Below, piece after piece: positions 21,776-44,600 of a stretch of 64,000 nucleotides of DNA. The position numbers and the translations under genes are program-made. This DNA is from Podarcis erhardii (taxonomy: Eukaryota). How positions within the stretch are numbered: position 1 is the stretch's first letter; every line of letters begins with the position of its first letter. The stretch is from NCBI GenBank assembly GCA_964252035.1, contig OZ176202.1; one strand, given 5' to 3'. The notes beneath the pieces were generated by a model. That model saw only the letters and a program-made list of their open reading frames with translations, was not told the DNA's origin and made no database searches.

Positions 21776-24535
21776 TTAGCTTGCACCTCCTGCTTTGTGC
21801 AACTGCCAGTGGAGGAGGAAAGCAGCTACATGAAGGCATCCTTAGCATTTGGGTACCATCCAGCATAGCTAATTAACTGATTGAGATTATACAAATAATT
21901 TCAACATGGCCTCCTGAGAACATACACTAGGAGTTCGCTTTTAGAAATCAGTGTAGTGGAATTACACAGCTAGGGCCCAAACTGCTGTTTTCTTGGTTTC
22001 ATCAGCAACGAATACTGTTGTAGATGAGATTCTCCAGTTGCAGTTGAATCTATATTTTCCACATCACATTCCTGCTCTCCCAAACTTTTCCTTTTCAAAT
22101 TGCCAAAATTTCTCAACCGTTCATTCACAAGACTAGAAGGTTATACTGGTTTTCTTCTTTAAACGAAAGCAAAGCTTCCCCCCCCCCCAAAAAAGTGAAC
22201 TGACGAGATTGCATAAGAGCATGTTTTCGTGTAGATAGAACTTCTCAACGTGAAAGCTTACTAAGGAATTCTTAATACTAAAAATCACACAGACAGTCCT
22301 CTTGTATTGCCATTTAGATCTATCATTCTGATTGATCACTGTGTGTTTCACTATTATTGAGCCTAATTTAACCCTATACACTTACACATCCATCTACTCC
22401 ATCTATTGTACCTGACATTCTACAAATTACTTACTCATGCAAATGATGACCTAAGTCAACCTTTTATGCTATTCGTGTTTAATTATACAAATGATATTTG
22501 ATAAATAAGATTATACATCCTTCCATATGTTTATTCTCTCCTTGATGAAAGTGAAATTTAATTTTCATGCAGATTTGTTGGAGGCTGTGCTTAATAAGTG
22601 CTGAGTTTCATATAGTGTGCAGATTACTCTGGTTTTGGGAAGTTGACAAAAACAAAATTCGTTCACAGAGAAGAGCTGTTTTTAATTAGATGCAATTCTA
22701 GTGACCGGATCTTGGAATCGTAGAATTGAAAACCATGCGTGTTGATTGATAGAACAAAATGAATATAACAAAGTGAGCATTTTGGCAAAAGCAGTATGAA
22801 TAATAGAGAAGATGCTGACTTGTGTTCTTTTTGAGAGGGCATTTCCATATTAAGCAATAAATGAAATTTGATGTATGATCAATTGAATTAATGCCATTAG
22901 AAGAAGAAAAAACCTTCAGTAACTAAAGTCTTGTCTCATTTACTGAATAAGAGTAAAGAGAACATCAGAAATATACTGTTTGGTTGACTGACCAGAATAT
23001 ACCACCTGGTCTACATAGCGCTGCCATACCTCAAGGCAGCATTGATGATTGCCAACATTTCACACAGAGGTCAGTTCCATAGTTATCCTACATCTTCCAC
23101 TGATGTTTCCTGCTGATGAAGGAAAACACCAATGGAGAAGTGGAAGGTTATGGCGCATGCAATAGTCTGGGCTGCTAGGAGAGTCTGTACTACTGCAATG
23201 TTTCGCCTTTCCATGCTACCCAGCCTAGCATAAAACTTATCTGTTGAAAGTTGAATGGACACTCAACTGTGCTGGAAAGACAGAAATATTGAGAGCACTG
23301 TAATAGCATTTAGCAGAAACCTTAATGAGAAAGAATGGTTCTTTTCAAATAACTGAATTCTTAAATATAGGTTAACCTGTTCCTGCATATGTGTACGTAT
23401 GCACCTGGGCACTTCTTCAGCTGTTCAGATATGAAGTGTGTTTATTTGAAAAATAAAATCACCTAGCAGCCTAGTCACTCATGTGTTTGCTGCAACAGTG
23501 TAGAAAGTTAGGTTGCAGTAGGATGTTCAGTGAAGCAAGGGAATAATTTCATCTTGCAATACTGTCTGTCACTTGTAATTACCAGAGGTGCTACTAGGGT
23601 GAACCTATGGCATGCAGATATTTACCTACGTATGCCAAATGTTTTGGGGTTGGTTATGAGCTTGGGAATATTAAATTGGGAGGGTGCTCTAGTTTACTGG
23701 GTAGAAACACACTAATTTAAAGACTTTATTTAGAGATTGTTTGGGGTAATTAATGGGGTTATGAAAGAGAGTTGAATTTGATTTGGAGCAGGATTTCTTG
23801 CGAAATTAATTGAGGGTAAATGAATTCAAGAGAAGCTGACTTTGAGTGATCTAGGGTGGGGCGAAGATTAACTGAATAATTTATTTGGGGTGATTTGGAT
23901 AGGAAGTTTGCTGGCTGGCTATGTGAAGTTTAAATTCTAAATGTGTGTTTGTTTAATACACACACAAACTCATTAACAAGCATATGCAAATATATGCCCC
24001 TTTGTGTTTTAAGTTCCTAGCAATTTTCCTGCTAATTAGTGTGCCAGACTTGAATGTAGCTTTTTAAGATGTCCAAAATGCCTAGAAAGGTCTGTGAGAT
24101 GTCTCCCTTGCTCTTGAATCTGTCCTGCCGCCACAAGACCTTGCAATTGCCTGTATGTGCTGTGCAACAACATCTGCGTCCACCGTTGGCCTGTGGCTAG
24201 CAATGCTGGCTTACCAGTGGGGGAACTTAGACCTTTGCTGATGTATTACATTTGTTAGCTTCAAGGGATTTTGTATTGGAGTGGGTGTGGCAAGGTTCAG
24301 TTGACCAAGCCTGCTTTATCTTTGAGTAAAAATGGTCTAGATGGTTTGTTGTTACCTTTTAAGTCCTTTATTGATGGACTTTTTTTTTTGTTTGTTTAAT
24401 TTGGTTTACTAGTTGATTTGATTTGGTGTGTGGGTGTGTTGGTGGTCCATTGTTTGAATTCAGCACTTTTATTCAACTTGTTTAGTTTAAACAGCTTTTA
24501 TAAATTTTGCCATTTTTACCTTCTGTTACATTGTA

Positions 24536-24766
24536 CAGTGGTACCTCGGGTTACATACGCTTCAGGTTACATACGCTTCAGGTTACAGACTCTGCTAACC
24601 CAGAAAGATTACCTCAGGTTAAGAACTTTGCTTCAGGATGAGAACAGAAATTGCACAGCGGCGGCGGGAGGCCCCATTAGCTAAAGTGGTGCTTCAGGTT
24701 AAGAACAGTTTCAGGTTAAGAACAGACCTCCGGAACGAATTAAGTACATAACCAAAGGTACCACTG
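24536..24766. mobile_element. Tc1/mariner-type MITE, same family as 4287
   Basis: TA|CAGTGGTACC...GGTACCACTG|TA. Confidence 0.88.
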
Positions 24767-24845
24767 TACTTTTATGAGGTTTTGTTCCTTATTAGCCACC
24801 ACGAATGCTATTTGTAGAAAGGCGGCACACATACTTTTAAAAATA

Positions 24846-24873
24846 CAATGGTGCCCCGCAAGACGAATGCCTC
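24846..24873. mobile_element. Left end of a Tc1/mariner-type MITE split by the Gypsy insertion
   Basis: TA|CAATGGTGCCCCGCAAGACGAA matches the inverse of the right TIR TTCGTCTTGCGAGGCACCACTG|TA. Confidence 0.88.
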
Positions 24874-25472
24874 TGTGATGGCCTGGGATTCCGATTCAGA
24901 GGATGAACCAGAGGAATCCCAGCCTGCACAGGAGTCCCCGCCTCCAGGGCCGGCTGAACTGGGGCAAGGCCTAGATGCTGAAGAGCCTGCACCTGTGACA
25001 GAGCATCAGGAGCTGGCCCCAGGTGAAGCCCTTCTGGCCCCAGAGGGGCTTGACGACTCAGTGGCCACAGGTGAGCCTCCTCCAGGGCCCAGTAACCCTT
25101 CGGCCTCTCCTGATCTGCAGAGGCTTAGGGCAGAGAGGCGAAGGGAACTGGTTGCCCCCAGGAGGAGTGCTCGCCTTAAGGCCAGAGGAGGCGGGGCTCC
25201 TGGGGGTCGGGACCGCCCCCGGCCTTAGAAGAGGATAAAAGCCCAGTCAGCCTGGCCCCAGGTTGCGGGAGCAACGTCGTTGTTGGCTTTGGACCTTCCT
25301 GTGTTCCTGATCCCTGCTTGGCCTCCTGTTCCTGACTATCCGGTGTTCCAGTTCCCAGCTCGGCCTCCTGTTCCAGCGTACCTGTTCCCCGCCCGGCTCC
25401 CCGTCTTGGACCTCGCCCCTCTTCGTGTGGACTCTGCTTACACCCACGGTACCTTCCCCCGGGACCAGCACA
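24874..25472 (+). repeat. 5' LTR (599 bp)
   Basis: TGTGATGGCC...GGGACCAGCACA; no difference from the 3' LTR found by eye. Confidence 0.96.
25233..25241 (+). promoter_or_regulatory. TATA-like box of the LTR (GGATAAAAG)
   Basis: Only A/T-rich stretch in the GC-rich LTR; about 30 nt upstream of the inferred start site at 25265. Confidence 0.7.
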
Positions 25473-25474
25473 GT

Positions 25475-25484
25475 TTGCTCCCGC
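25475..25484 (+). promoter_or_regulatory. Self-priming primer-binding site TTGCTCCCGC
   Basis: Starts 2 nt after the LTR end; exact reverse complement of LTR 25265-25274 (GCGGGAGCAA); no TGG-type tRNA PBS. Confidence 0.8.
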
Positions 25485-25535
25485 CACACCCGCACTCCCC
25501 CTTAGTTGGGGTGCGTTCGGGAAGAGCCAGAGGCC

Positions 25536-28500
25536 ATGGCTGACCAGGCGGCTGCGCTGGTGGCATTGGCCCAGGAAAACCAGGCCTTGACCCACACCGT
25601 TCAGCAGCTAAGCGATGTGGTTGCGGCGCTTCAGCAGCGGTTGGAAGCCTTTCCAGATCCTGGGGCCGACGCCCTAGCTCCAGGCAAGTACCCAGTGGCC
25701 TTGCCAGAGAAATTTGATGGGACCCAGGCCAGTTTTCCCATGTTCCTCGCCCAGGCCAAGTTGTACATTCAGGGGCGAGCCCGGAACTTCCCTGACGACC
25801 GCACCAAGGTGCATTTTTTAATCAGTTTGTTAAAGGACCAGGCGGCCAAGTGGGCTTTGCCACTGCTCCGGCAAGACTCTCCTTTGCTAACGGACTATGT
25901 GGGGTTTTGTAACCACTTAGAGACTGCGTTTGGTAACCCACTGAAGGAGAGCCAAGCCAATCGGGCGATTCGTCGGTTGAGACAGGACAAGTCCACAGCC
26001 GCCGCCTACGCCACAGAATTTCGGCTGTTGGCACAAGACTTGTCTTGGAATGACTCTGCACTACGGGACCAGTATCTTGAGGGACTGTCGGACGAGATAC
26101 TGGACCAGTTGGCCATGATGGATCGTCCCACCACACTGGATACCCTCATTCAGCGGAGCCTGCAGATAGACGATCGGTTGGAGGACCGTCGCCAGACCCG
26201 AGACCGCCAGCACTCCCGACTCCTGGCGCCAGTCCTTCCCAGCAGGTCCACGCCCACAGCCGAGTTGCCAGTCGAGCCAACGCCGCTCGGGGCTGCGCGA
26301 CCTCGGCTCTCCCCCTCGGAGAAGTCGCGGCGTCGGGAGGGGAACCTGTGCCTTTACTGCGGTGGGGGTGGACATTACGCCCGTTCCTGTCCCGAGAAGC
26401 TACCAGTCGCAGGGAAACCGCCAACCTCGGTAGCCGAAGGCCCTAGCAACGTGGGGTCCCAAACCATGCAAGAAGGGCCCTCACCAGTAGAATTGCGACA
26501 TCTCATGGTACCGGTGCGTCTCTACCCTCCAGGTGGGCCCTGGATTCTTACCCACGCTTTGGTAGATTCGGGGGCAACCCGCTCCTATATGGACGCTGCC
26601 TTTGCCGCGCATCATCAGGTGCCACTTCAGAACAAGCCAGAACCGGTACAGGTGGAGGCAATTGACGGACGGCTCCTGCGTTCGGGTGCCGTCACTCGGG
26701 AGACCCAGCCCTTGGTCCTGTGTCTCCAGCAGCACCGGGAGGTGCGAACCTTGGACATTGCCTCCATGCCCCGGTTCCCCCTGGTGCTCGGAATGGACTG
26801 GCTAGAGGCTCACAACGTTCAGATTGACTGGGTCAAACGGACCGTACACTTCCCAGATCCATGTTCCCATGCTCAGTCGCAGATGCTAGCGGCCGCACCC
26901 ACGGAGGAGGCAGCACCCACGCTCCCAGCCGTGTACCGGGACTACCAAGACGTGTTCGAGGAACGGGGGGCAGACCAGCTGCCGCCGCATCGGTCTTTTG
27001 ACTGCGGCATAGACCTCCAGCCCGGAGCGCCCCTACCGGTGAGTCGCTTATACTCTCTAACAGAGCCAGAGCGCGAGGCTTTGCAGGACTTCTTGCGCAA
27101 GAACCTGGAGCGTGGGTTCATTAGGCCTTCCACCTCGCCTACTGCGGCACCAGTGCTCTTTGTTAAGAAGAAATGTGGGGAACTCCGTCCTTGCCATGAT
27201 TACCGAGCCCTAAACAAAATCACCATCCCAGACCGGTACCCCTTGCCCCTTATTTCGGAGTTGCTGGAGCGGGTGCAAGGGGCACAGGTGTTCACCAAGC
27301 TGGACCTCCGGGGGGCCTACAACTTGATTCGGATCCGAGCCGGGGATGAGTGGAAGACAGCGTTTGGGACCCGGTACGGGCAGTTCGAATACTTGGTTAT
27401 GCCTTTTGGTTTATGCAACGCGCCTGCTGTGTTCCAACGCTACATCAACCACGTGTTCCAGGATTTGTTAGACAAGTACGTGGTGGTGTACTTGGATGAC
27501 ATACTGGTTTACTCCCGTGACCCGGCTCGCCATGAGGGACATGTCCGGACCGTGCTGCAGCGCTTGCGTGAGCACCGTTTGTACGCAAAGCTCAGCAAGT
27601 GCGAGTTCCATCAGCGGACTGTGGACTTCCTTGGTCACCGGCTCTCTCCAGATGGGGTGCAGATGGACCCTGGGAAGGTGGCAGCGGTTTGAGAATGGGC
27701 GGCACCCCGGAACCGCAAGGACCTACAGCGTTTCCTGGGGTTCGCCAACTACTACCGGACCTTCATCGCAGATTATGCTCAGCGCACCACCCCGTTGACC
27801 CGGCTACTGCGCCCAAAGACGCCGTTTTCCTGGGACGAGGAGGCAGAGGAGGCGTTCCAGGGGTTGAAGGCCTGTTTCCAGAGGGCGCCGATCTTACAAC
27901 ATCCTGACCCCTCTCGACCCTTTGTGGTGGAGACCGACGCCTCCAGTACGGCTCTCGGTGCCGTCTTGTCTCAACAGAATGGACCTGAAGCGCCACTCTT
28001 GCCCTGTGCCTTCTATTCCCGCCAGCTCCTACCAGCGGAGCGTAACTATACTGTGTGGGAGCGGGAACTACTGGCCATCAAGGTGGCCTTTGAGGTCTGG
28101 CGCCACCATCTTGAGGGGGCACGACATCCGGTGGAGGTGAGAACCGACCACCGGAATCTGGAGTACCTCCAGACCACCCGCAAGCTGAACCAAAGACAGA
28201 TCCGGTGGGCGTTGTTCTTTTCCCGGTTCCAGTTCCGGATCCGCTATATCCCTAGCTCTCAGAACCAGAAGGCAGATGCCCTGTCCCGGAAACCTGAAGA
28301 CAACGCAGACACGGTACAGCAAGCAGAACCCACCACGATCCTACCTCCAGCTGCGTTCCTGGCCACCCAGGAGGCGGAACCACTGCAGGCTCGGGTGCGG
28401 GAACAGCAGCGGGTCGACGCTTGGGCCCAGGAACGACTCCGGGAGCTGGCTGAAGGGTCCAGCCCACAGTATCCGGGGCTGGTCCTGCATCAGGGCCTTC

Positions 28501-30209
28501 TGCTGCACCACGGCCGTCTGTACATCCCGCCAGGGCCACTGCGGCTGGAGGTTCTCCGGATGGCCCATGATGCCCCAGCAGCGGGGCACTTTGGACGGTA
28601 TCGGACCACCCATCTGGTCAGTCGTGAGTTTTGGTGGCCCCGCCTGAAGGCCGACGTGGCTCGCTACGTTGCTGGTTGTGATGTCTGCCGGCGCGCCAAG
28701 GGTCCTACCGGGCGACCCCCCGGCCTACTTCAGCCATTGCCAGTTCCACCGCGCCCTTGGCACACGGTTTCATTGGACTTTGTAGTGGACTTACCCCCGT
28801 CTCGTGGCTGTACCTGCCTTCTAGTGTTCTCCGACCATTTCACCAAGATGGTGCACTGCACCCCCTGCCCATCTGTACCCACAGCCAAGGAAACCGCTCA
28901 GCTGTACCTTCAGCATGTCTTCCGCCTGCATGGCCTACCAGAGCGCGTGGTGTCCGACCGGGGCGTTCAGTTCACATCCCGGTTCTGGCGAGCATTACAC
29001 CAGACCCTCGGGACAGAGGTCTGCCTCTCGTCAGCCTACCACCCACAGACCGATGGCCAGACGGAACGGGCGAACGCGGTGCTGGAGCAGTACCTCCGGT
29101 GTTACTGCAGCTACCAGCAGGATGACTGGGTCGACCACCTGGCATTGGCGGAGTTCGCCTACAACAACGCGGTGAATGCATCCACCCAGCAGACCCCGTT
29201 CCAGGCCAGTTACGGTTATCATCCACGGCTGTTTCCAGATGTGCTGCCGGCATCCGCAGTCCCGGCGGTGACGGAGTGGCTTCAAGAGCTCCAGTCCCAG
29301 CAACAGCTTTTGGTGGAGCAACTGCACCAGGCCAAGGAAGCGTACAAAGCCCAGGCCGACCGCCACCGCCAGGTGGGGCCGGAACTTCGCGTCGGTGACC
29401 TGGTTTGGCTCTCCACTCGCCACCTCCACCCCTCTCGACCTTCGCGGAAGTTGGACGCCCGCTTCAACGGCCCGTTCCCTATCGTGGACCAAGTCTCTCC
29501 TGTAGCATTCCGTCTCCGGTTACCCGCAACCCTGAAGGTTCACCCGGTCTTCCACAGGTCCCTGCTGAGTCCGGTGGCCCCACCCGACGAGTTCCACCCG
29601 AACCGTCCCCGTCCGCAGCCAGTGTTGGTTCAGGGAGAGCCTGAGTATGAGGTGGAACGCATCCTGGACTCCCGATACCGCAGGGGAAAGCTGCAGTATC
29701 TCATTGACTGGAAGGGGTATGGACCGGAGGACCGTTCCTGGGAACCAGCGGCCAACGTCCACGCACCTGCCTGCCTCCGAGAGTTCCATGCGACGTACCC
29801 CGGCAAGCCGGGTCCGGACCCTCGGTTGAGGGGGGGGCCTGGGAGGGGGGATGGTGTGATGGCCTGGGATTCCGATTCAGAGGATGAACCAGAGGAATCC
29901 CAGCCTGCACAGGAGTCCCCGCCTCCAGGGCCGGCTGAACTGGGGCAAGGCCTAGATGCTGAAGAGCCTGCACCTGTGACAGAGCATCAGGAGCTGGCCC
30001 CAGGTGAAGCCCTTCTGGCCCCAGAGGGGCTTGACGACTCAGTGGCCACAGGTGAGCCTCCTCCAGGGCCCAGTAACCCTTCGGCCTCTCCTGATCTGCA
30101 GAGGCTTAGGGCAGAGAGGCGAAGGGAACTGGTTGCCCCCAGGAGGAGTGCTCGCCTTAAGGCCAGAGGAGGCGGGGCTCCTGGGGGTCGGGACCGCCCC
30201 CGGCCTTAG
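25536..30209 (+). pseudogene. Single-frame gag-pol polyprotein (1557 codons) broken by one in-frame TGA at 27690-27692 (codon 719)
   Basis: GCCATGG start; PEG10/RTL-like capsid (PEKFDG...DDRTKVHFLISLL), CCHC knuckle CLYCGGGGHYARSC, protease LVDSGAT, RT YLDDILVY, RNase H VETDAS/DHRNL, IN HHCC and DDE, chromodomain EYEVERIL...IDWKGY...SWEP. Track ORFs 25506-27692 and 27795-30209 share one frame, and EWAAPRNRKDLQRFLGFANYYR follows the stop directly. Confidence 0.93.
29841..29851 (+). promoter_or_regulatory. Polypurine tract GGGAGGGGGGA
   Basis: Purine run ending 3 nt before the 3' LTR; also inside the pol reading frame. Confidence 0.85.
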
Positions 30210-30453
30210 AAGAGGATAAAAGCCCAGTCAGCCTGGCCCCAGGTTGCGGGAGCAACGTCGTTGTTGGCTTTGGACCTTCCTGTGTTCCTGATCCCTGCTT
30301 GGCCTCCTGTTCCTGACTATCCGGTGTTCCAGTTCCCAGCTCGGCCTCCTGTTCCAGCGTACCTGTTCCCCGCCCGGCTCCCCGTCTTGGACCTCGCCCC
30401 TCTTCGTGTGGACTCTGCTTACACCCACGGTACCTTCCCCCGGGACCAGCACA
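29855..30453 (+). repeat. 3' LTR (599 bp)
   Basis: Direct repeat of 24874-25472, followed by TSD GCCTC. Confidence 0.96.
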
Positions 30454-30458
30454 GCCTC

Positions 30459-30768
30459 GCAAGACGAAAAACCCGCTAGACGAAAGGGTTTTCCGTTTTG
30501 GAGGCGCTTCGCAAAACGAATTTCCCTATGGGCTTGCTTCGCAAGACGAAATGTCTTGTGAGTTTTTCCGACTTTTTTCCCCTCCCCCCCCCTTTTTCTA
30601 AGCCGCTAAGCTGCTTATCCGCTAAGCTGATAAGCCGCTAAAAGCCGCTAAAAGCCGCTAATAACGCTAATCTGCTAAGCCGTCAATGGGCTTGCTTCGC
30701 AAGACGAAAAAACCGCTGGACGAAGAGAATCGCGGAACGGATTCTTTTCGTCTTGCGAGGCACCACTG
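30459..30768. mobile_element. Remainder of the split MITE (about 338 bp when rejoined), with internal GCCGCTAA repeats
   Basis: Continues ...GCCTC|GCAAGACGAA; ends ...GCACCACTG followed by TA. Confidence 0.88.
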
Positions 30769-30889
30769 TAGTAAAATGAATAAATATACCATTATGTGGT
30801 GCAAATGAAAATAAGCCTCGTACTCTTCCCCACAGACTACTTAAGGCTGCTTGAAATCTCACAGCTCAAATGTTATTTGTATTTTCAAG

Positions 30890-31099
30890 GTTTGGTCGGT
30901 CAATTCTGCAGGCCGGACTGCTAGCAGCTGGACCCAATGTAAGACAGGCCCAGCCCCTCCTCAAGGACTTCATGCACCTCTGTTTGATACAGTGGCATCT
31001 ACTTCAGCTGTGGTGAAAATCAGTCCTCCTCTTAAGCCAAATGGAATAGTCAGTCTCTACAGGCTGTTCTCAAACAACACAAAGGGAAAGGATATGGTG
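30890..31099 (+). CDS. USH2A: Usherin exon (human exon 65 equivalent)
   Basis: ttcaag|GTTTGG...GTG|gtgagt; 210 nt; VWSVNSAGRT...KGKDMV. Confidence 0.95.
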
Positions 31100-41472: not shown

Positions 41473-41612
41473 AATCATAGAACTGCGGGGTTGGAAGGGA
41501 CTAGGAGGGTCATCTAGTCCAACCCCCTGCAATGCAGGAAACTTGCCCAACCTGGGGCTCAAACCCACAATCCTGAGATTAAGAGTCTCATACTCCTCCA
41601 ACTGAGCTACCT
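41473..41612 (-). mobile_element. SINE with tRNA-Lys-derived head and CR1-like tail; second copy near 8719-8840
   Basis: Minus strand reads TAGCTCAGTTGG...GAGACTCTTAATCTCAGG...GAGCCCCAGGTTGGGC followed by ...TTCTATGATT. Confidence 0.7.
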
Positions 41613-44600
41613 GGAGAGGCCAGCGGTGTCATCTAAGGCAGCTTCCTATGCTCCAACAGTTAAAGCAAATTCACTAAGCACATGCTTAAGGTTTGCTGCT
41701 TGATATGGGGCAGAGGACAAAAGCAGGAGGTCTTTGTGGTATTCTCTCCCCTCTTCCCATAATGTTTCGCCATGTGTACTCATGTCACGTGTTTCGCAAC
41801 CAGCAGCACAAACTGTTGGAGAAATGCGCTGCCCAAGGAAGGGTGCCTAAATGGTTGACGCGTGACATGGGGCTGTCATATTTGGCTGCAGTTCTACACT
41901 GAAACCAAGGGAGTTTTAAAATACTTAGCTTTGGCCAGATGACACCTAAGTAGAGGATAACTCTGCCTACCGCTCAGGATGTGAAACTTGGCAAAGGTAC
42001 AGTATTTGAAGTGAGAAGCAGCCGCTTTTATCTGTGCCTTGTGCCTTTCTAAAGGGAATCATTGCAGAATTATATTGCTAGCCATTTCCCCCTCTCCCAC
42101 ATGTGCTGTGTTCCCCCCGCCCCCTTCAGACTGCACAGCATGCTTAAATGTTTCTGTCATTTTCGCAGCTCAAGCCTTTGTTAAAAGCCTCTTAAAAGAG
42201 CGCAGCAAGTCAACAATTTTAATTTTTATGTGGCCCCTTAAGGACCTGTCAGTGCTATGGCTACTCCTCGAGCATTACCGAGTTAGGGGGCCAAGCGGGG
42301 GCCTTAAAGGAAAATGTTTGTGTTTCAACAATGACCCTCAGGAGCTGGGGGATGCTGCTCTCAGCAACATTTCTATGGTGACTCTGGGTGGATTGTAAAG
42401 GCTAAATTAGGGCCTGTTTAATCAATTTTAGTTGAGTTTCTGAACTAGTAAAATGAGCTTTGAAAATAGGCTGGTTTGCCTTTTATAGGAATAGTCAGTT
42501 GTAGCTGAAAGAAAGGCTCAAGAGCACCAGTAAAAACAAAAACAAAAAACTGAGGATGCAGTTTGATTATAATAAGCCAAAATGTGTGAAAAGTAGGTAT
42601 TACAATAGGGAGAGAAAAACCTGAGTGTTGTAAATGCTTAATTCAGGCACCCCCTTGTTACAAGGCTGTAAAAAGTTCAATGAAATGGCTTAATAAGCTC
42701 TTCTCCCCTATTCTTTGTTCTGCCTTCTAGTCTAGATAGGCCTTTAGGAACATTTGAAGCGGTGTTCTTTCAAGTCAGACCACTGGTCAAGCTAACTTTG
42801 TGTTGACTAGCAGTAGCTGCCCAGGGTTTCTGACCTGGATGTTTCCCTGCCCTAATTATAGATGCTGGGGATTGAACCTAAGGCTTTCTGCATGCAAAGG
42901 ATGTGCTCTACCACTGTGTGGTCTCCTCCTCAAAATACCCAGGATCCTTCCCTTCCTTTGGTCCCACTTAACCTTTGTTAAGGGCAAAGGAATCTGCCTT
43001 ATACTGAGTAAGACCATGGATGCTGCTGCCTGCAGCAGAAGTAGCCAATGTGATGTCCTTTCGATGATATTGGACTACAACTCCCATCATCCCTAGTCAC
43101 TTGCCAGACAGTGTGTGGCTAATGGGAACTGGAGTCCAGCAGCATCTGTCGGGTACCATTTTGGGTCCACTACACTGGCTGTCCAGGGTTTCAGACATGA
43201 CTTTTTCAATGCCACAAGCGGAGATGCCAGGGATTGAACCTGGGACCTTTTGCACACAAAGGCTTTGTGCTACCTCCAAGCTACAACGTTAGCTGCTGGC
43301 ATTACCAACACTTTGCTATGTTCTCAGTCCCAAACGGGGGGATCTAGAAACCCCCAGTCCACTCGCAGCTCAAATCCAGCTACTGAAAATGAGCTAGGCC
43401 TGGGTGGGAGGGGGTCCTCTGGGCCAGTGGTGGAGCTTCATGCTCTGGCAGTGTGTGGTGGAGAGCAGGCGGGGGCGGGGCTGGCCTGTGTCTCTCCCCC
43501 CCCCTTCCTTTGCCAGTGCTCTGGGCTATCCCTGCTCACAAGCATCAAGCATGCTGGCAATGCCTCCTGCTGTCCATACATTGAGAAAGGGCCTTATAGG
43601 TGGACTGGCATACACATGTATTCCTCCTACACACAAGGGAGGCACCTGGGACAGTCAGATGGCTATCAGTGTATATGTGAGGTCTCTCCTCACACTCACC
43701 AAACATGTGGCCAGTGGGTGAATCATCAGCAAGGGGGCAGAAAGAATGGAGAGAGACCCATTTTAAAACAGTGAACTTGAAATTGTTATAGTATATAAGT
43801 TTATGCTATTGTGTTCTATATATTACCATTATGGGGTATTTTGTTTATTTGATAAATTTAATTAGTATAGTATAAATTAAAGCAAGCTTGCCCATCGAGA
43901 TTTGCCAGCTACCTCTGACCTCAAAGGGAAACTAAAAGCATAGACAGGACAACCTTGTTTCTGCTCTGAGTGTGTCAACAGCTGAGAGAGGTTTACATGT
44001 AAAAAAGCCGCATTTCCATTCACTCTCTTTTCTAGTTTTCCTTCCCCTTCGCCTTTGGAAGGTTAACTGTCTGAACTGCTGCTCTTTCCCCCATCTCCTC
44101 TGTTTTAACTCCTTGTCTTCTCTACTGCCTTGCCTCTCCTCCTTTATTTCCTGCACCTATGATGTTTCAAAAAAAATAATGCAGAAACCCTCTTTCACTG
44201 ATAATCCCTGCCATCAGCCTCCTCTTGCTACTTCTTTACAAGTCCCTGTCATCTCGTCTTCACAAGTATCACAGAGCTCAGATAAGGTAAGCCTTTGCGA
44301 TGCATATGTCTGCATAAACATTGAGAAAGATATATTTCTAAACCGCTAGGCAATGTCTTCTTCCTCCATCCCCCCACCCCCACCACTGTATTAGATTGAG
44401 GGAGTCGCTCTGTTTTATTATCGCTTTCAAGGTCACCCGGCATAAGGTGCAGATAATTGTAAGTGCAGTTTTTTACACCTAACTCAATTACTGGCTTGAA
44501 TCTGGAACACTCAGCCACTGCAGTCCCATACAAATGCTAGTGAAACTTGCCTCCGAGAGCAACAAATTGGCTTTCAGTTGCCATAAGCCTTCACTGCAAA

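What the first reader, a model, noticed from the sequence alone, without database searches (positions are those of the whole stretch)
25233..25515. No tRNA primer site: the element appears to prime reverse transcription with its own 5' end
Seen: after the 5' LTR comes GT-TTGCTCCCGC rather than TGG. This 10-mer is the exact reverse complement of GCGGGAGCAA at 25265-25274, which starts 30 nt after the ATAAAA of the TATA-like box, where transcription should begin. The 2-nt gap to the terminal CA fits integrase 3' processing. An 8-bp hairpin (25491-25498 with 25508-25515) follows. Established: S. pombe Tf1 self-primes when its first 11 nt anneal to the PBS, and this was proposed for vertebrate Tf1/sushi elements. 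To my knowledge it has not been tested in an amniote element, and this near-intact copy is a usable substrate.
Basis: partly seen in the sequence, partly recalled or inferred. Interest (0 to 1): 0.7.

Follow-up and report, generated by a model that had tools for sequence, protein, structure and literature searches.

The report
Self-priming lizard LTR retrotransposon
A very young jumping gene in a lizard genome has no tRNA primer site; the ten letters after its first repeat pair with the predicted start of its own RNA, which is the expected self-priming layout of its family, not a new mechanism.

Summary
The element spans 24874-30453. It has identical 599-bp LTRs, a 5-bp target duplication and one gag-pol frame with a single in-frame stop.

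After the 5' LTR's terminal CA come GT and then TTGCTCCCGC (25475-25484). This is the exact reverse complement of GCGGGAGCAA (25265-25274), which starts 30 nt after the only TATA-like motif in the LTR. No TGG-type tRNA site is present. The chance of such a match anywhere in the LTR is about 0.5%.

Among metagenome relatives found by pol similarity, at least nine unrelated-sequence families show the same layout: TATA, 31-42 nt, a 9-12-nt box starting Y|R, R/U5, ACA, usually 2 nt, then the box's reverse complement. One family carries two compensatory double changes.

The proteins place the element in a lacertid lizard (Podarcis-like). It is a chromovirus with a PEG10/sushi-type gag. The literature already calls self-priming a common feature of Tf1/sushi elements, vertebrate ones included. 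This is therefore a new member of a known kind.

The start site could not be mapped, because the RNA reads did not cover the leader.

The parts
24869..24873 (.). Target-site duplication GCCTC, left copy
   Evidence: Same 5-mer at 30454-30458. The empty-site sequence is seen in reads from paralogous repeat copies.
24874..25472 (+). 5' LTR, 599 bp, TG...CA
   Evidence: Matches 29855-30453 at 599/599 positions.
25233..25244 (+). TATA-like box GGATAAAAGCCC (core ATAAAA at 25235-25240)
   Evidence: Only TATA- or poly(A)-type hexamer in the LTR. Relatives carry a clear TATA box at the same distance from their self-primer box. Promoter function is inferred.
25265..25274 (+). Predicted self-primer GCGGGAGCAA, taken as the first 10 nt of the transcript (T|G, pyrimidine-purine, at -1/+1)
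   Evidence: Exact reverse complement of 25475-25484. It lies 30 nt after ATAAAA. A second copy sits in the 3' LTR at 30246-30255. The start site itself is not mapped.
25473..25474 (+). 2-nt spacer GT between the LTR's terminal CA and the primer-binding site
   Evidence: Read directly from the sequence. The other self-priming candidates have a 2-nt spacer (1 nt in L009; L004 reads as 1 or 2).
25475..25484 (+). Primer-binding site TTGCTCCCGC, complementary to the element's own RNA
   Evidence: Duplex energy is -18.8 kcal/mol. There is no TGG and no match to the window's only tRNA.
25491..25515 (+). 8-bp hairpin (one G.U, 9-nt loop) just after the primer-binding site
   Evidence: Its role is unknown and it is only mildly rarer than chance.
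25536..30209 (+). Single gag-pol frame: gag DUF4939/Ty3 capsid, protease, RT, RNase H, integrase, SH3_Tf2-1, chromodomain. One in-frame stop at 27690-27692. The frame ends at 30207-30209, inside the 3' LTR.
29841..29851 (+). Polypurine tract GGGAGGGGGGA, 3 nt before the 3' LTR
   Evidence: Read directly from the sequence. Its role as plus-strand primer is inferred.
29855..30453 (+). 3' LTR
30454..30458 (.). Target-site duplication GCCTC, right copy

Best explanation
This is a very recently inserted Ty3/gypsy chromovirus of the Tf1/sushi kind in a lacertid lizard. It most likely starts reverse transcription by self-priming.

Inferred sequence of events, modelled on Tf1:
1. RNA polymerase II starts about 30 nt after GGATAAAAG, at G25265.
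2. The first 10 nt of the RNA fold back onto 25475-25484, which lies 2 nt beyond U5.
3. The element's RNase H cuts the RNA just after the paired stretch. This leaves a 10-nt RNA primer with a free 3'-OH.
4. Reverse transcriptase extends the primer through U5 and R (25474 back to 25275, about 200 nt). This gives the minus-strand strong-stop DNA, which transfers to the 3' R.
5. Later the plus strand copies the primer, so the binding site is rewritten from the 5' box in every cycle.
6. Integrase trims the 2 nt beyond CA.

Shown here: the sequence anatomy, its improbability by chance, the absence of a tRNA-type site, the family assignment, and conservation of the architecture with covariation in relatives.

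Inferred: the start site and every biochemical step.
For: In the window:
- An exact 10-nt complement sits 2 nt after the LTR's CA. It arose by chance in 98 of 20,000 shuffles.
- Its partner starts 30 nt after the only TATA-like motif, at a pyrimidine-purine step.
- There is no TGG site, no Rfam hit and no match to the window's tRNA.
- The element is a chromovirus with one gag-pol frame and a PEG10/sushi-type gag.

In relatives retrieved only by pol similarity:
- The same layout, with different sequences, occurs in L018/L024/L049/L070/L014 (AGAACTCGAT type), L067 (AGATAAACCT), L066 (AAGTCAAGTCT), L023 (AGAGTGAGAT), L002 (TTGAAGCTA), L061 (CGATTCGCT), L009 (TAGATTGCGT, exact against its 3' LTR copy) and L038/L057 (8 nt plus a bulged extension).
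- The TATA box lies 31-38 nt upstream of the box (42 nt in L009; none within 45-60 nt in L038/L057).
- The spacer after ACA is 2 nt (1 nt in L009).
- None of the 12 relatives with clean TG...CA LTRs has a TGG site.
- A constrained detector gave 10 hits of 9 nt or longer in 55 regions. The two decoy strands gave 1 and 0.
- Two compensatory double changes occur within one family: C:G to U:A in L014 and U:A to A:U in L070.
- Signature-bearing loci are scattered over the whole pol tree, which also holds the vertebrate clade with this element.
- L004, a contig inside that vertebrate clade, pairs its post-LTR 11-mer with a box in its 3' LTR.

Literature: self-priming is established in Tf1 and is described as a common feature of Tf1/sushi elements (PMC10085805, PMC7175516, PMC6317226).
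Against: - No start-site evidence. The laid RNA runs carry another species label than the best DNA holders. Their reads covered only the 3' half of pol and U3 to about 25300-25380, and none covered 25480-26887.
- Thermodynamic folding is ambiguous. The 5'-end:PBS duplex has probability 0.85 when 25265-25500 is folded. It vanishes for longer RNAs, where a local hairpin (25266-73 with 25302-09) wins. The forced duplex costs 5.4 kcal/mol.
- The two extra 'pretzel' duplexes required in Tf1 are no better than shuffled controls here.
- The LTR has no canonical poly(A) signal after 25265. The only A-rich hexamer is the TATA-like motif itself, so the extent of R is unknown.
- No other copy of this lizard family could be examined.
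- The genome's full tRNA set was not available.
Confidence: 0.8

Rival explanations
1. The complementarity is a structural stem of the leader, for example for packaging, dimerisation or translation control. The true primer would be something else, such as a tRNA fragment or another small RNA.
For: The start site is unmapped. Longer-RNA folds prefer other structures. I could not screen the species' full tRNA set; the window holds only one tRNA-like gene.
Against: A structural stem has no need to begin 2 nt (1 in L009) after the LTR's CA, which is where a primer must sit to give correct cDNA ends. It also has no need to pair with a box about 31-42 nt after the TATA in nine unrelated-sequence families. 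Each family's site matches its own LTR, not a shared host RNA. No TGG site exists next to the LTR.
Confidence: 0.08
2. ATAAAA (25235-40) is the polyadenylation signal, not the TATA box. Transcripts would then start elsewhere in the LTR, and the 10-mer would lie at the R/U5 border rather than at the RNA's 5' end.
For: GATAAA at 25234 is the only poly(A)-like hexamer in the LTR. Sense read depth falls between about 25220 and 25320.
Against: Relatives carry unmistakable TATA boxes (TATATAAG, TATAAG, TATATAG) at the same distance from their boxes. A few sense reads do extend past 25290, 25319 and 25380. Self-priming needs R to continue beyond the primer, and the conserved layout fits a start at the box.
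Confidence: 0.07
3. It is a chance match with no function.
For: It is only 10 bp in a G+C-rich LTR of 599 bp, and only one copy was available.
Against: It arose in 98 of 20,000 shuffles for any position, and is rarer with the TATA-distance and spacer constraints. The same architecture recurs in relatives against near-empty decoys.
Confidence: 0.03

Closest known systems
Tf1 and Tf2 of Schizosaccharomyces pombe (founders of self-primed reverse transcription)
   Same: Chromodomain integrase and a single gag-pol frame. No tRNA site. The binding site just after the 5' LTR is complementary to the first nucleotides of the transcript (11 nt in Tf1, PMC7175516; 10 nt predicted here).
   Different: The host is an amniote. 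The primer is 10 nt, not 11. The R-U5 loop is about 200 nt. The two flanking 'pretzel' duplexes needed in Tf1 (PMC10085805) are not supported here. Nothing has been tested experimentally.
Vertebrate Tf1/sushi elements (sushi-ichi of pufferfish and others; Butler et al. 2001, as cited in PMC10085805 and PMC6317226)
   Same: Same clade by gag type (DUF4939, PEG10-like) and pol. Self-priming was predicted from sequence in the same way.
   Different: I could not read Butler 2001 and do not know which hosts it covered. This copy is from a lizard, has identical LTRs and is nearly intact.
PEG10 and RTL1 (domesticated sushi-type genes of mammals)
   Same: The gag-protease-RT part is 37% identical to PEG10 over 73% of the query. 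The gag matches the solved PEG10 capsid domain. A gecko relative is labelled RTL1-like.
   Different: Those are single-copy host genes without LTRs or priming sites. This is a mobile element with all replication signals.
Reptilian chromoviruses (Kokosar and Kordis 2013, PMC3670739; Piskurek et al. 2009 for Anolis, cited in PMC2774666)
   Same: Full-length, apparently active Metaviridae including chromoviruses are already known from lizards and turtles. Anolis proteins are 55% identical in pol.
   Different: I found no statement about their priming mode in the papers I could search.
Plant Tcn1-clade chromoviruses and TAR copia elements (Neumann et al. 2019, PMC6317226)
   Same: They lack tRNA sites, and self-priming was predicted from LTR/post-LTR complementarity.
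   Different: They have distant hosts. TAR belongs to another superfamily.

Membership tests
Tf1/sushi group of chromoviruses (Metaviridae) | Integrase with a C-terminal chromodomain | tested here: met
   Pfam Chromo at residues 618-665 of the second ORF piece, plus SH3_Tf2-1, rve and Integrase_H2C2. HP1/CBX chromodomains match in the PDB search.
Tf1/sushi group of chromoviruses (Metaviridae) | gag and pol in one reading frame | tested here: met
   25536-30209 is one frame with a single in-frame stop at 27690-92, between RT and RNase H.
Tf1/sushi group of chromoviruses (Metaviridae) | Sushi-type gag (related to PEG10/RTL) | tested here: met
   DUF4939, Ty3_capsid and Retrotrans_gag. PEG10 proteins hit at E about 1e-96. 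The PEG10 capsid structure 7lga hits at E 1.4e-15.
Tf1/sushi group of chromoviruses (Metaviridae) | Phylogenetic placement with the reference elements Tf1 and sushi-ichi | not tested
   No reference sequences of Tf1 or sushi-ichi were available. A tree without them puts the element in a vertebrate clade (lizards, tuatara, amphibians) next to a chytrid element (FastTree, midpoint root only).
Tf1/sushi group of chromoviruses (Metaviridae) | No tRNA site; the post-LTR sequence is complementary to the predicted 5' end of the transcript | tested here: met
   The same layout is found in relatives.
Tf1-type self-priming mechanism | The complementary box is the actual 5' end of the mRNA | tested here: inconclusive
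   The RNA reads gave no coverage of the leader and no start pile-ups. Only the TATA distance and the Y|R step support it.
Tf1-type self-priming mechanism | Three-duplex 'pretzel' RNA structure around the primer duplex | tested here: inconclusive
   Duplexes between the site's flanks and R/U5 are no stronger than shuffles: -15.6 against a mean of -15.4, and -10.3 against -10.2 kcal/mol. An imperfect helix of the U5 end with 25277-25285 does appear in the fold.
Tf1-type self-priming mechanism | RNase H cleavage of the RNA duplex, and cDNA primed by the RNA's own 5' end | not testable with these tools
   Needs biochemistry or cDNA mapping.

The most novel reading that the evidence does not exclude
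This lizard family is a currently mobile amniote retrotransposon and the closest living kind to the ancestor of PEG10. It would self-prime with only a 10-nt primer across a 200-nt loop, without the flanking duplexes that Tf1 requires. That would mean vertebrate self-priming runs on a simpler RNA structure, and that a competing 5' hairpin (25266-73 with 25302-09) could switch the RNA between priming and other uses.
Probability: 0.15. Interest if true: 0.5.

Novelty: new member of a known kind. Interest (0 to 1): 0.3.

Why it matters
Self-priming has been shown experimentally only in fission yeast. In vertebrates it rests on sequence prediction alone. A lizard copy with identical LTRs, intact signals and transcribed relatives shows that the predicted layout persists in amniotes. 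It gives concrete coordinates for observational tests, namely start-site mapping and strong-stop cDNA detection. It also documents, from unbiased metagenome relatives, how strictly the layout is kept: TATA, about 31-42 nt, the box, then ACA, usually 2 nt and the site. That layout can serve as an annotation rule for elements that seem to lack a primer site. It does not change the understanding of the mechanism.

Tried and rejected
- RNA reads for the start site. The only raw RNA runs carry a species label (A) different from the best DNA holders (C). Most reads were 95-99% alike with fixed differences. They covered the 3' half of pol and U3 only, and gave no start or end pile-ups. Uninformative.
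I therefore could not fetch DNA around the Podarcis, Anolis, gecko, snake or fish homologues found.
- A viral-contig scan with gag-PR-RT found no relatives.
- The search of earlier findings by words and by sequence gave nothing on priming in this family.
- Minimum-energy folding depends on the RNA length chosen and is not decisive.
- 'Pretzel' flanking duplexes are not better than shuffles.
- Rfam found no family in 24000-31000.
- The window's only tRNA-like gene (Lys-CTT, 41545-41615, minus strand) has no complement of 6 nt or more to the post-LTR 48 nt.
- The PDB holds no Tf1 sequence to use as a reference; Ty3 is the nearest solved relative.
- L004, a contig in the vertebrate clade, matches between its post-LTR 11-mer and its 3' LTR. 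Its 5' LTR is homologous only over the last 114 bp, so the assembly may be chimeric. I counted it as suggestive only.
- L016, L026, L028, L031, L033, L043 and L048 had unclear LTR ends or no signature and were left out of the family count.
- The papers by Lin and Levin (1997, 1998) and by Esnault and Levin (2015) are not held. Butler et al. 2001 is known to me only through citations.

Full report
**The element.**
- Direct reading and a repeat search define a 5,580-bp LTR retrotransposon at 24874-30453.
- Its two 599-bp LTRs match at every position, begin with TG and end with CA. They are flanked by the 5-bp duplication GCCTC.
- The element sits inside another abundant repeat. RNA reads from uninterrupted copies of that repeat run from 24873 straight into the sequence that follows 30458. 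This confirms the insertion boundaries independently (loose ends).
- One reading frame runs from the ATG at 25536 to 30209. It is interrupted only by an in-frame stop at 27690-92 and ends inside the 3' LTR.
- Pfam finds a DUF4939/Ty3-capsid gag, protease, RT, RNase H, integrase, the Tf2-1-type SH3 domain and a chromodomain.
- The best protein matches are Podarcis muralis proteins at 95-98% identity. Gecko, Anolis and tuatara proteins follow at 52-61% in pol.
- PEG10 is the best mammalian match, at 37% identity over 73% of gag-PR-RT. The solved PEG10 capsid domain also matches.
- The host is therefore a lacertid lizard, and the element is a sushi-type chromovirus.

**The observation.**
- After the 5' LTR's CA come GT (25473-74) and TTGCTCCCGC (25475-84). 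This is the exact reverse complement of GCGGGAGCAA at 25265-74, and the pairing is exactly 10 bp.
- That box starts 30 nt after ATAAAA (25235-40), at a T|G step. The motif is the only TATA- or poly(A)-like hexamer in the LTR.
- No TGG lies near the LTR end.
- In 20,000 shuffles of the LTR, a 10-nt complement to any of the first six offsets appeared 98 times.
- The hairpin at 25491-98 with 25508-15 exists, with one G.U pair. Comparable hairpins occur about four times in the element.

**Attempts to see the start site.**
- Laid on 24600-29850, these runs gave sparse sense-strand reads over the 3' half of pol and over U3 up to about 25300-25380. Most had fixed differences from this copy.
- No reads fell on 25480-26887, and there were no start or end pile-ups.
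- The reads show that related copies are transcribed. They say nothing about the start.
- A few reads crossing 25290, 25319 and 25380 hint weakly that 3' ends lie beyond the box.

**RNA folding.**
- The 10-bp duplex is worth -18.8 kcal/mol.
- It dominates the ensemble (p 0.85) when 25265-25500 is folded.
- In longer RNAs it loses to a local hairpin (25266-73 with 25302-09). Forcing the duplex costs 5.4 kcal/mol.
- Tf1 needs two further duplexes beside the primer duplex, the 'pretzel' (PMC10085805). Here the best pairings of the site's flanks with R/U5 are no stronger than shuffled controls.
- Folding is therefore compatible with the model but is not evidence for it.

**Comparative test.**
Instead I retrieved 80 metagenome contigs by pol similarity alone, at 34-46% identity.
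- Sixteen of them had LTR pairs with both copies inside the contig.
- None of the 12 with clean TG...CA ends has a TGG site.
- Searching each element's post-LTR sequence against its own LTR found complements of 10-12 nt in L018, L024, L049 and L067. L038 and L057 gave 8 nt, extended across a 1-nt bulge.
- In L009 the 10-mer TAGATTGCGT is exact against the 3' LTR copy. The 5' copy carries a CpG-type change.
- A detector applied to the region upstream of gag in 55 loci added L014, L070, L066, L023, L002 and L061. The detector required a CA, a 2-nt spacer, a reverse complement of 8 nt or more lying 40-1300 nt upstream, and a TATA motif 22-45 nt before that complement.
- For matches of 9 nt or longer it found 10 hits on the true strand, against 1 and 0 on two decoys. 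The signal peaks at a spacer of 2.
- Across these families the binding-site sequences are unrelated: AGAACTCGAT, AGATAAACCT, AAGTCAAGTCT, AGAGTGAGAT, TTGAAGCTA, CGATTCGCT, TAGATTGCGT and ATAATCTT.
- The geometry is nevertheless constant. The box lies 31-38 nt after the TATA (42 in L009; no TATA seen in L038/L057) and begins with a purine after a pyrimidine (L002 is an exception). The LTR ends ACA, and 2 nt follow (1 in L009).
- Within the AGAACTCGAT family, L014 and L070 each carry a change on both sides that keeps the pair. The old copy L035 has an uncompensated change.
- A quick pol tree puts signature-bearing loci in every major branch. The lizard element sits in a well-supported vertebrate clade. 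Unlabelled loci mostly lack the 5' region, so they are not counter-examples.
- One contig inside that vertebrate clade, L004, pairs its post-LTR 11-mer with a box in its 3' LTR. The local context there resembles the lizard's (…AAGCCC… GTT|GC…). Its 5' LTR is only partly homologous, so I treat it as suggestive only.

**Mechanism.**
- The best reading is Tf1-type self-priming. [quoted passage not shown]
- For this element, the RNA is predicted to start at 25265 and pair with 25475-84. A cut after about 10 nt would give the primer. About 200 nt of strong-stop DNA would follow, then transfer through R.
- Because the plus strand later copies the primer, the site is rewritten from the box in every cycle. 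This explains exact pairing in a copy with identical LTRs, and compensated differences among relatives (inference).

**Open points.**
- The start site is unmapped.
- The extent of R is unknown, because no canonical poly(A) signal follows the box.
- The auxiliary RNA structure is unsupported.
- The full tRNA set could not be screened. Only one tRNA-like gene lies in the window and it shows no match. Rfam found nothing in the region.

**Novelty.**
[quoted passage not shown] They cite predictions for vertebrate elements from 2001 (PMC10085805, PMC6317226).
- Active chromoviruses in reptiles are also known (PMC3670739).
- I found no paper linking self-priming to a lizard or other reptile.
- The finding is thus a well-supported new member of a known kind. 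Its value is as a defined, young amniote example and as a guide for annotation.

**Limits and referrals.**

Noticed in passing
window 24600-24873 and 30459-30700: The element is inserted in another repeat that recurs as 'gcaagacgaa'-type motifs. That repeat is very abundant in RNA reads (depth 140-236 per bin, both orientations, many variant positions). Reads from other copies show the empty site.
   Followed up: partly
window 29855-30209 (and its copy at 24874-25228): The pol frame continues 355 nt into the 3' LTR, so U3 encodes the integrase tail. Its stop codon (TAG, 30207-09) ends 6 nt before the ATAAAA core of the 3' LTR's TATA-like motif. This was already noted by the scan (s1-268845, s1-224428).
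   Followed up: partly
window 25234-25240: GATAAA(A) is the only TATA-like and the only poly(A)-signal-like hexamer in the 599-bp LTR. Where transcripts of this family are polyadenylated is unexplained.
   Followed up: partly
window 25266-25273 with 25302-25309: A local hairpin can sequester the predicted self-primer. It wins over the primer:site duplex in folds of longer leader RNAs.
   Followed up: partly
L024:1390-1411, L014:124-145, L049:2879-2901, L070:3250-3270: In the AGAACTCGAT family, the bases just upstream of the self-primer box are a near copy of the binding site (…GAACTCC|ATCGAGTTC…). This makes a palindrome centred on the predicted start site.
   Followed up: no
L004, L006, L068: These metagenome contigs fall inside the vertebrate clade of the pol tree, next to Xenopus, Leptobrachium and Pleurodeles proteins. 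They are probably host DNA in host-associated metagenomes.
   Followed up: no
window 41545-41615 (minus strand): ARAGORN calls a tRNA-Lys(CTT)-like gene, the only one in the window. It may be a SINE head rather than a true tRNA gene.
   Followed up: no
window 27592-29850: Sense-strand RNA reads of related copies cover only the 3' half of pol and U3, and none cover gag or the leader. This could be 3' bias, truncated copies or an internal start.
   Followed up: no
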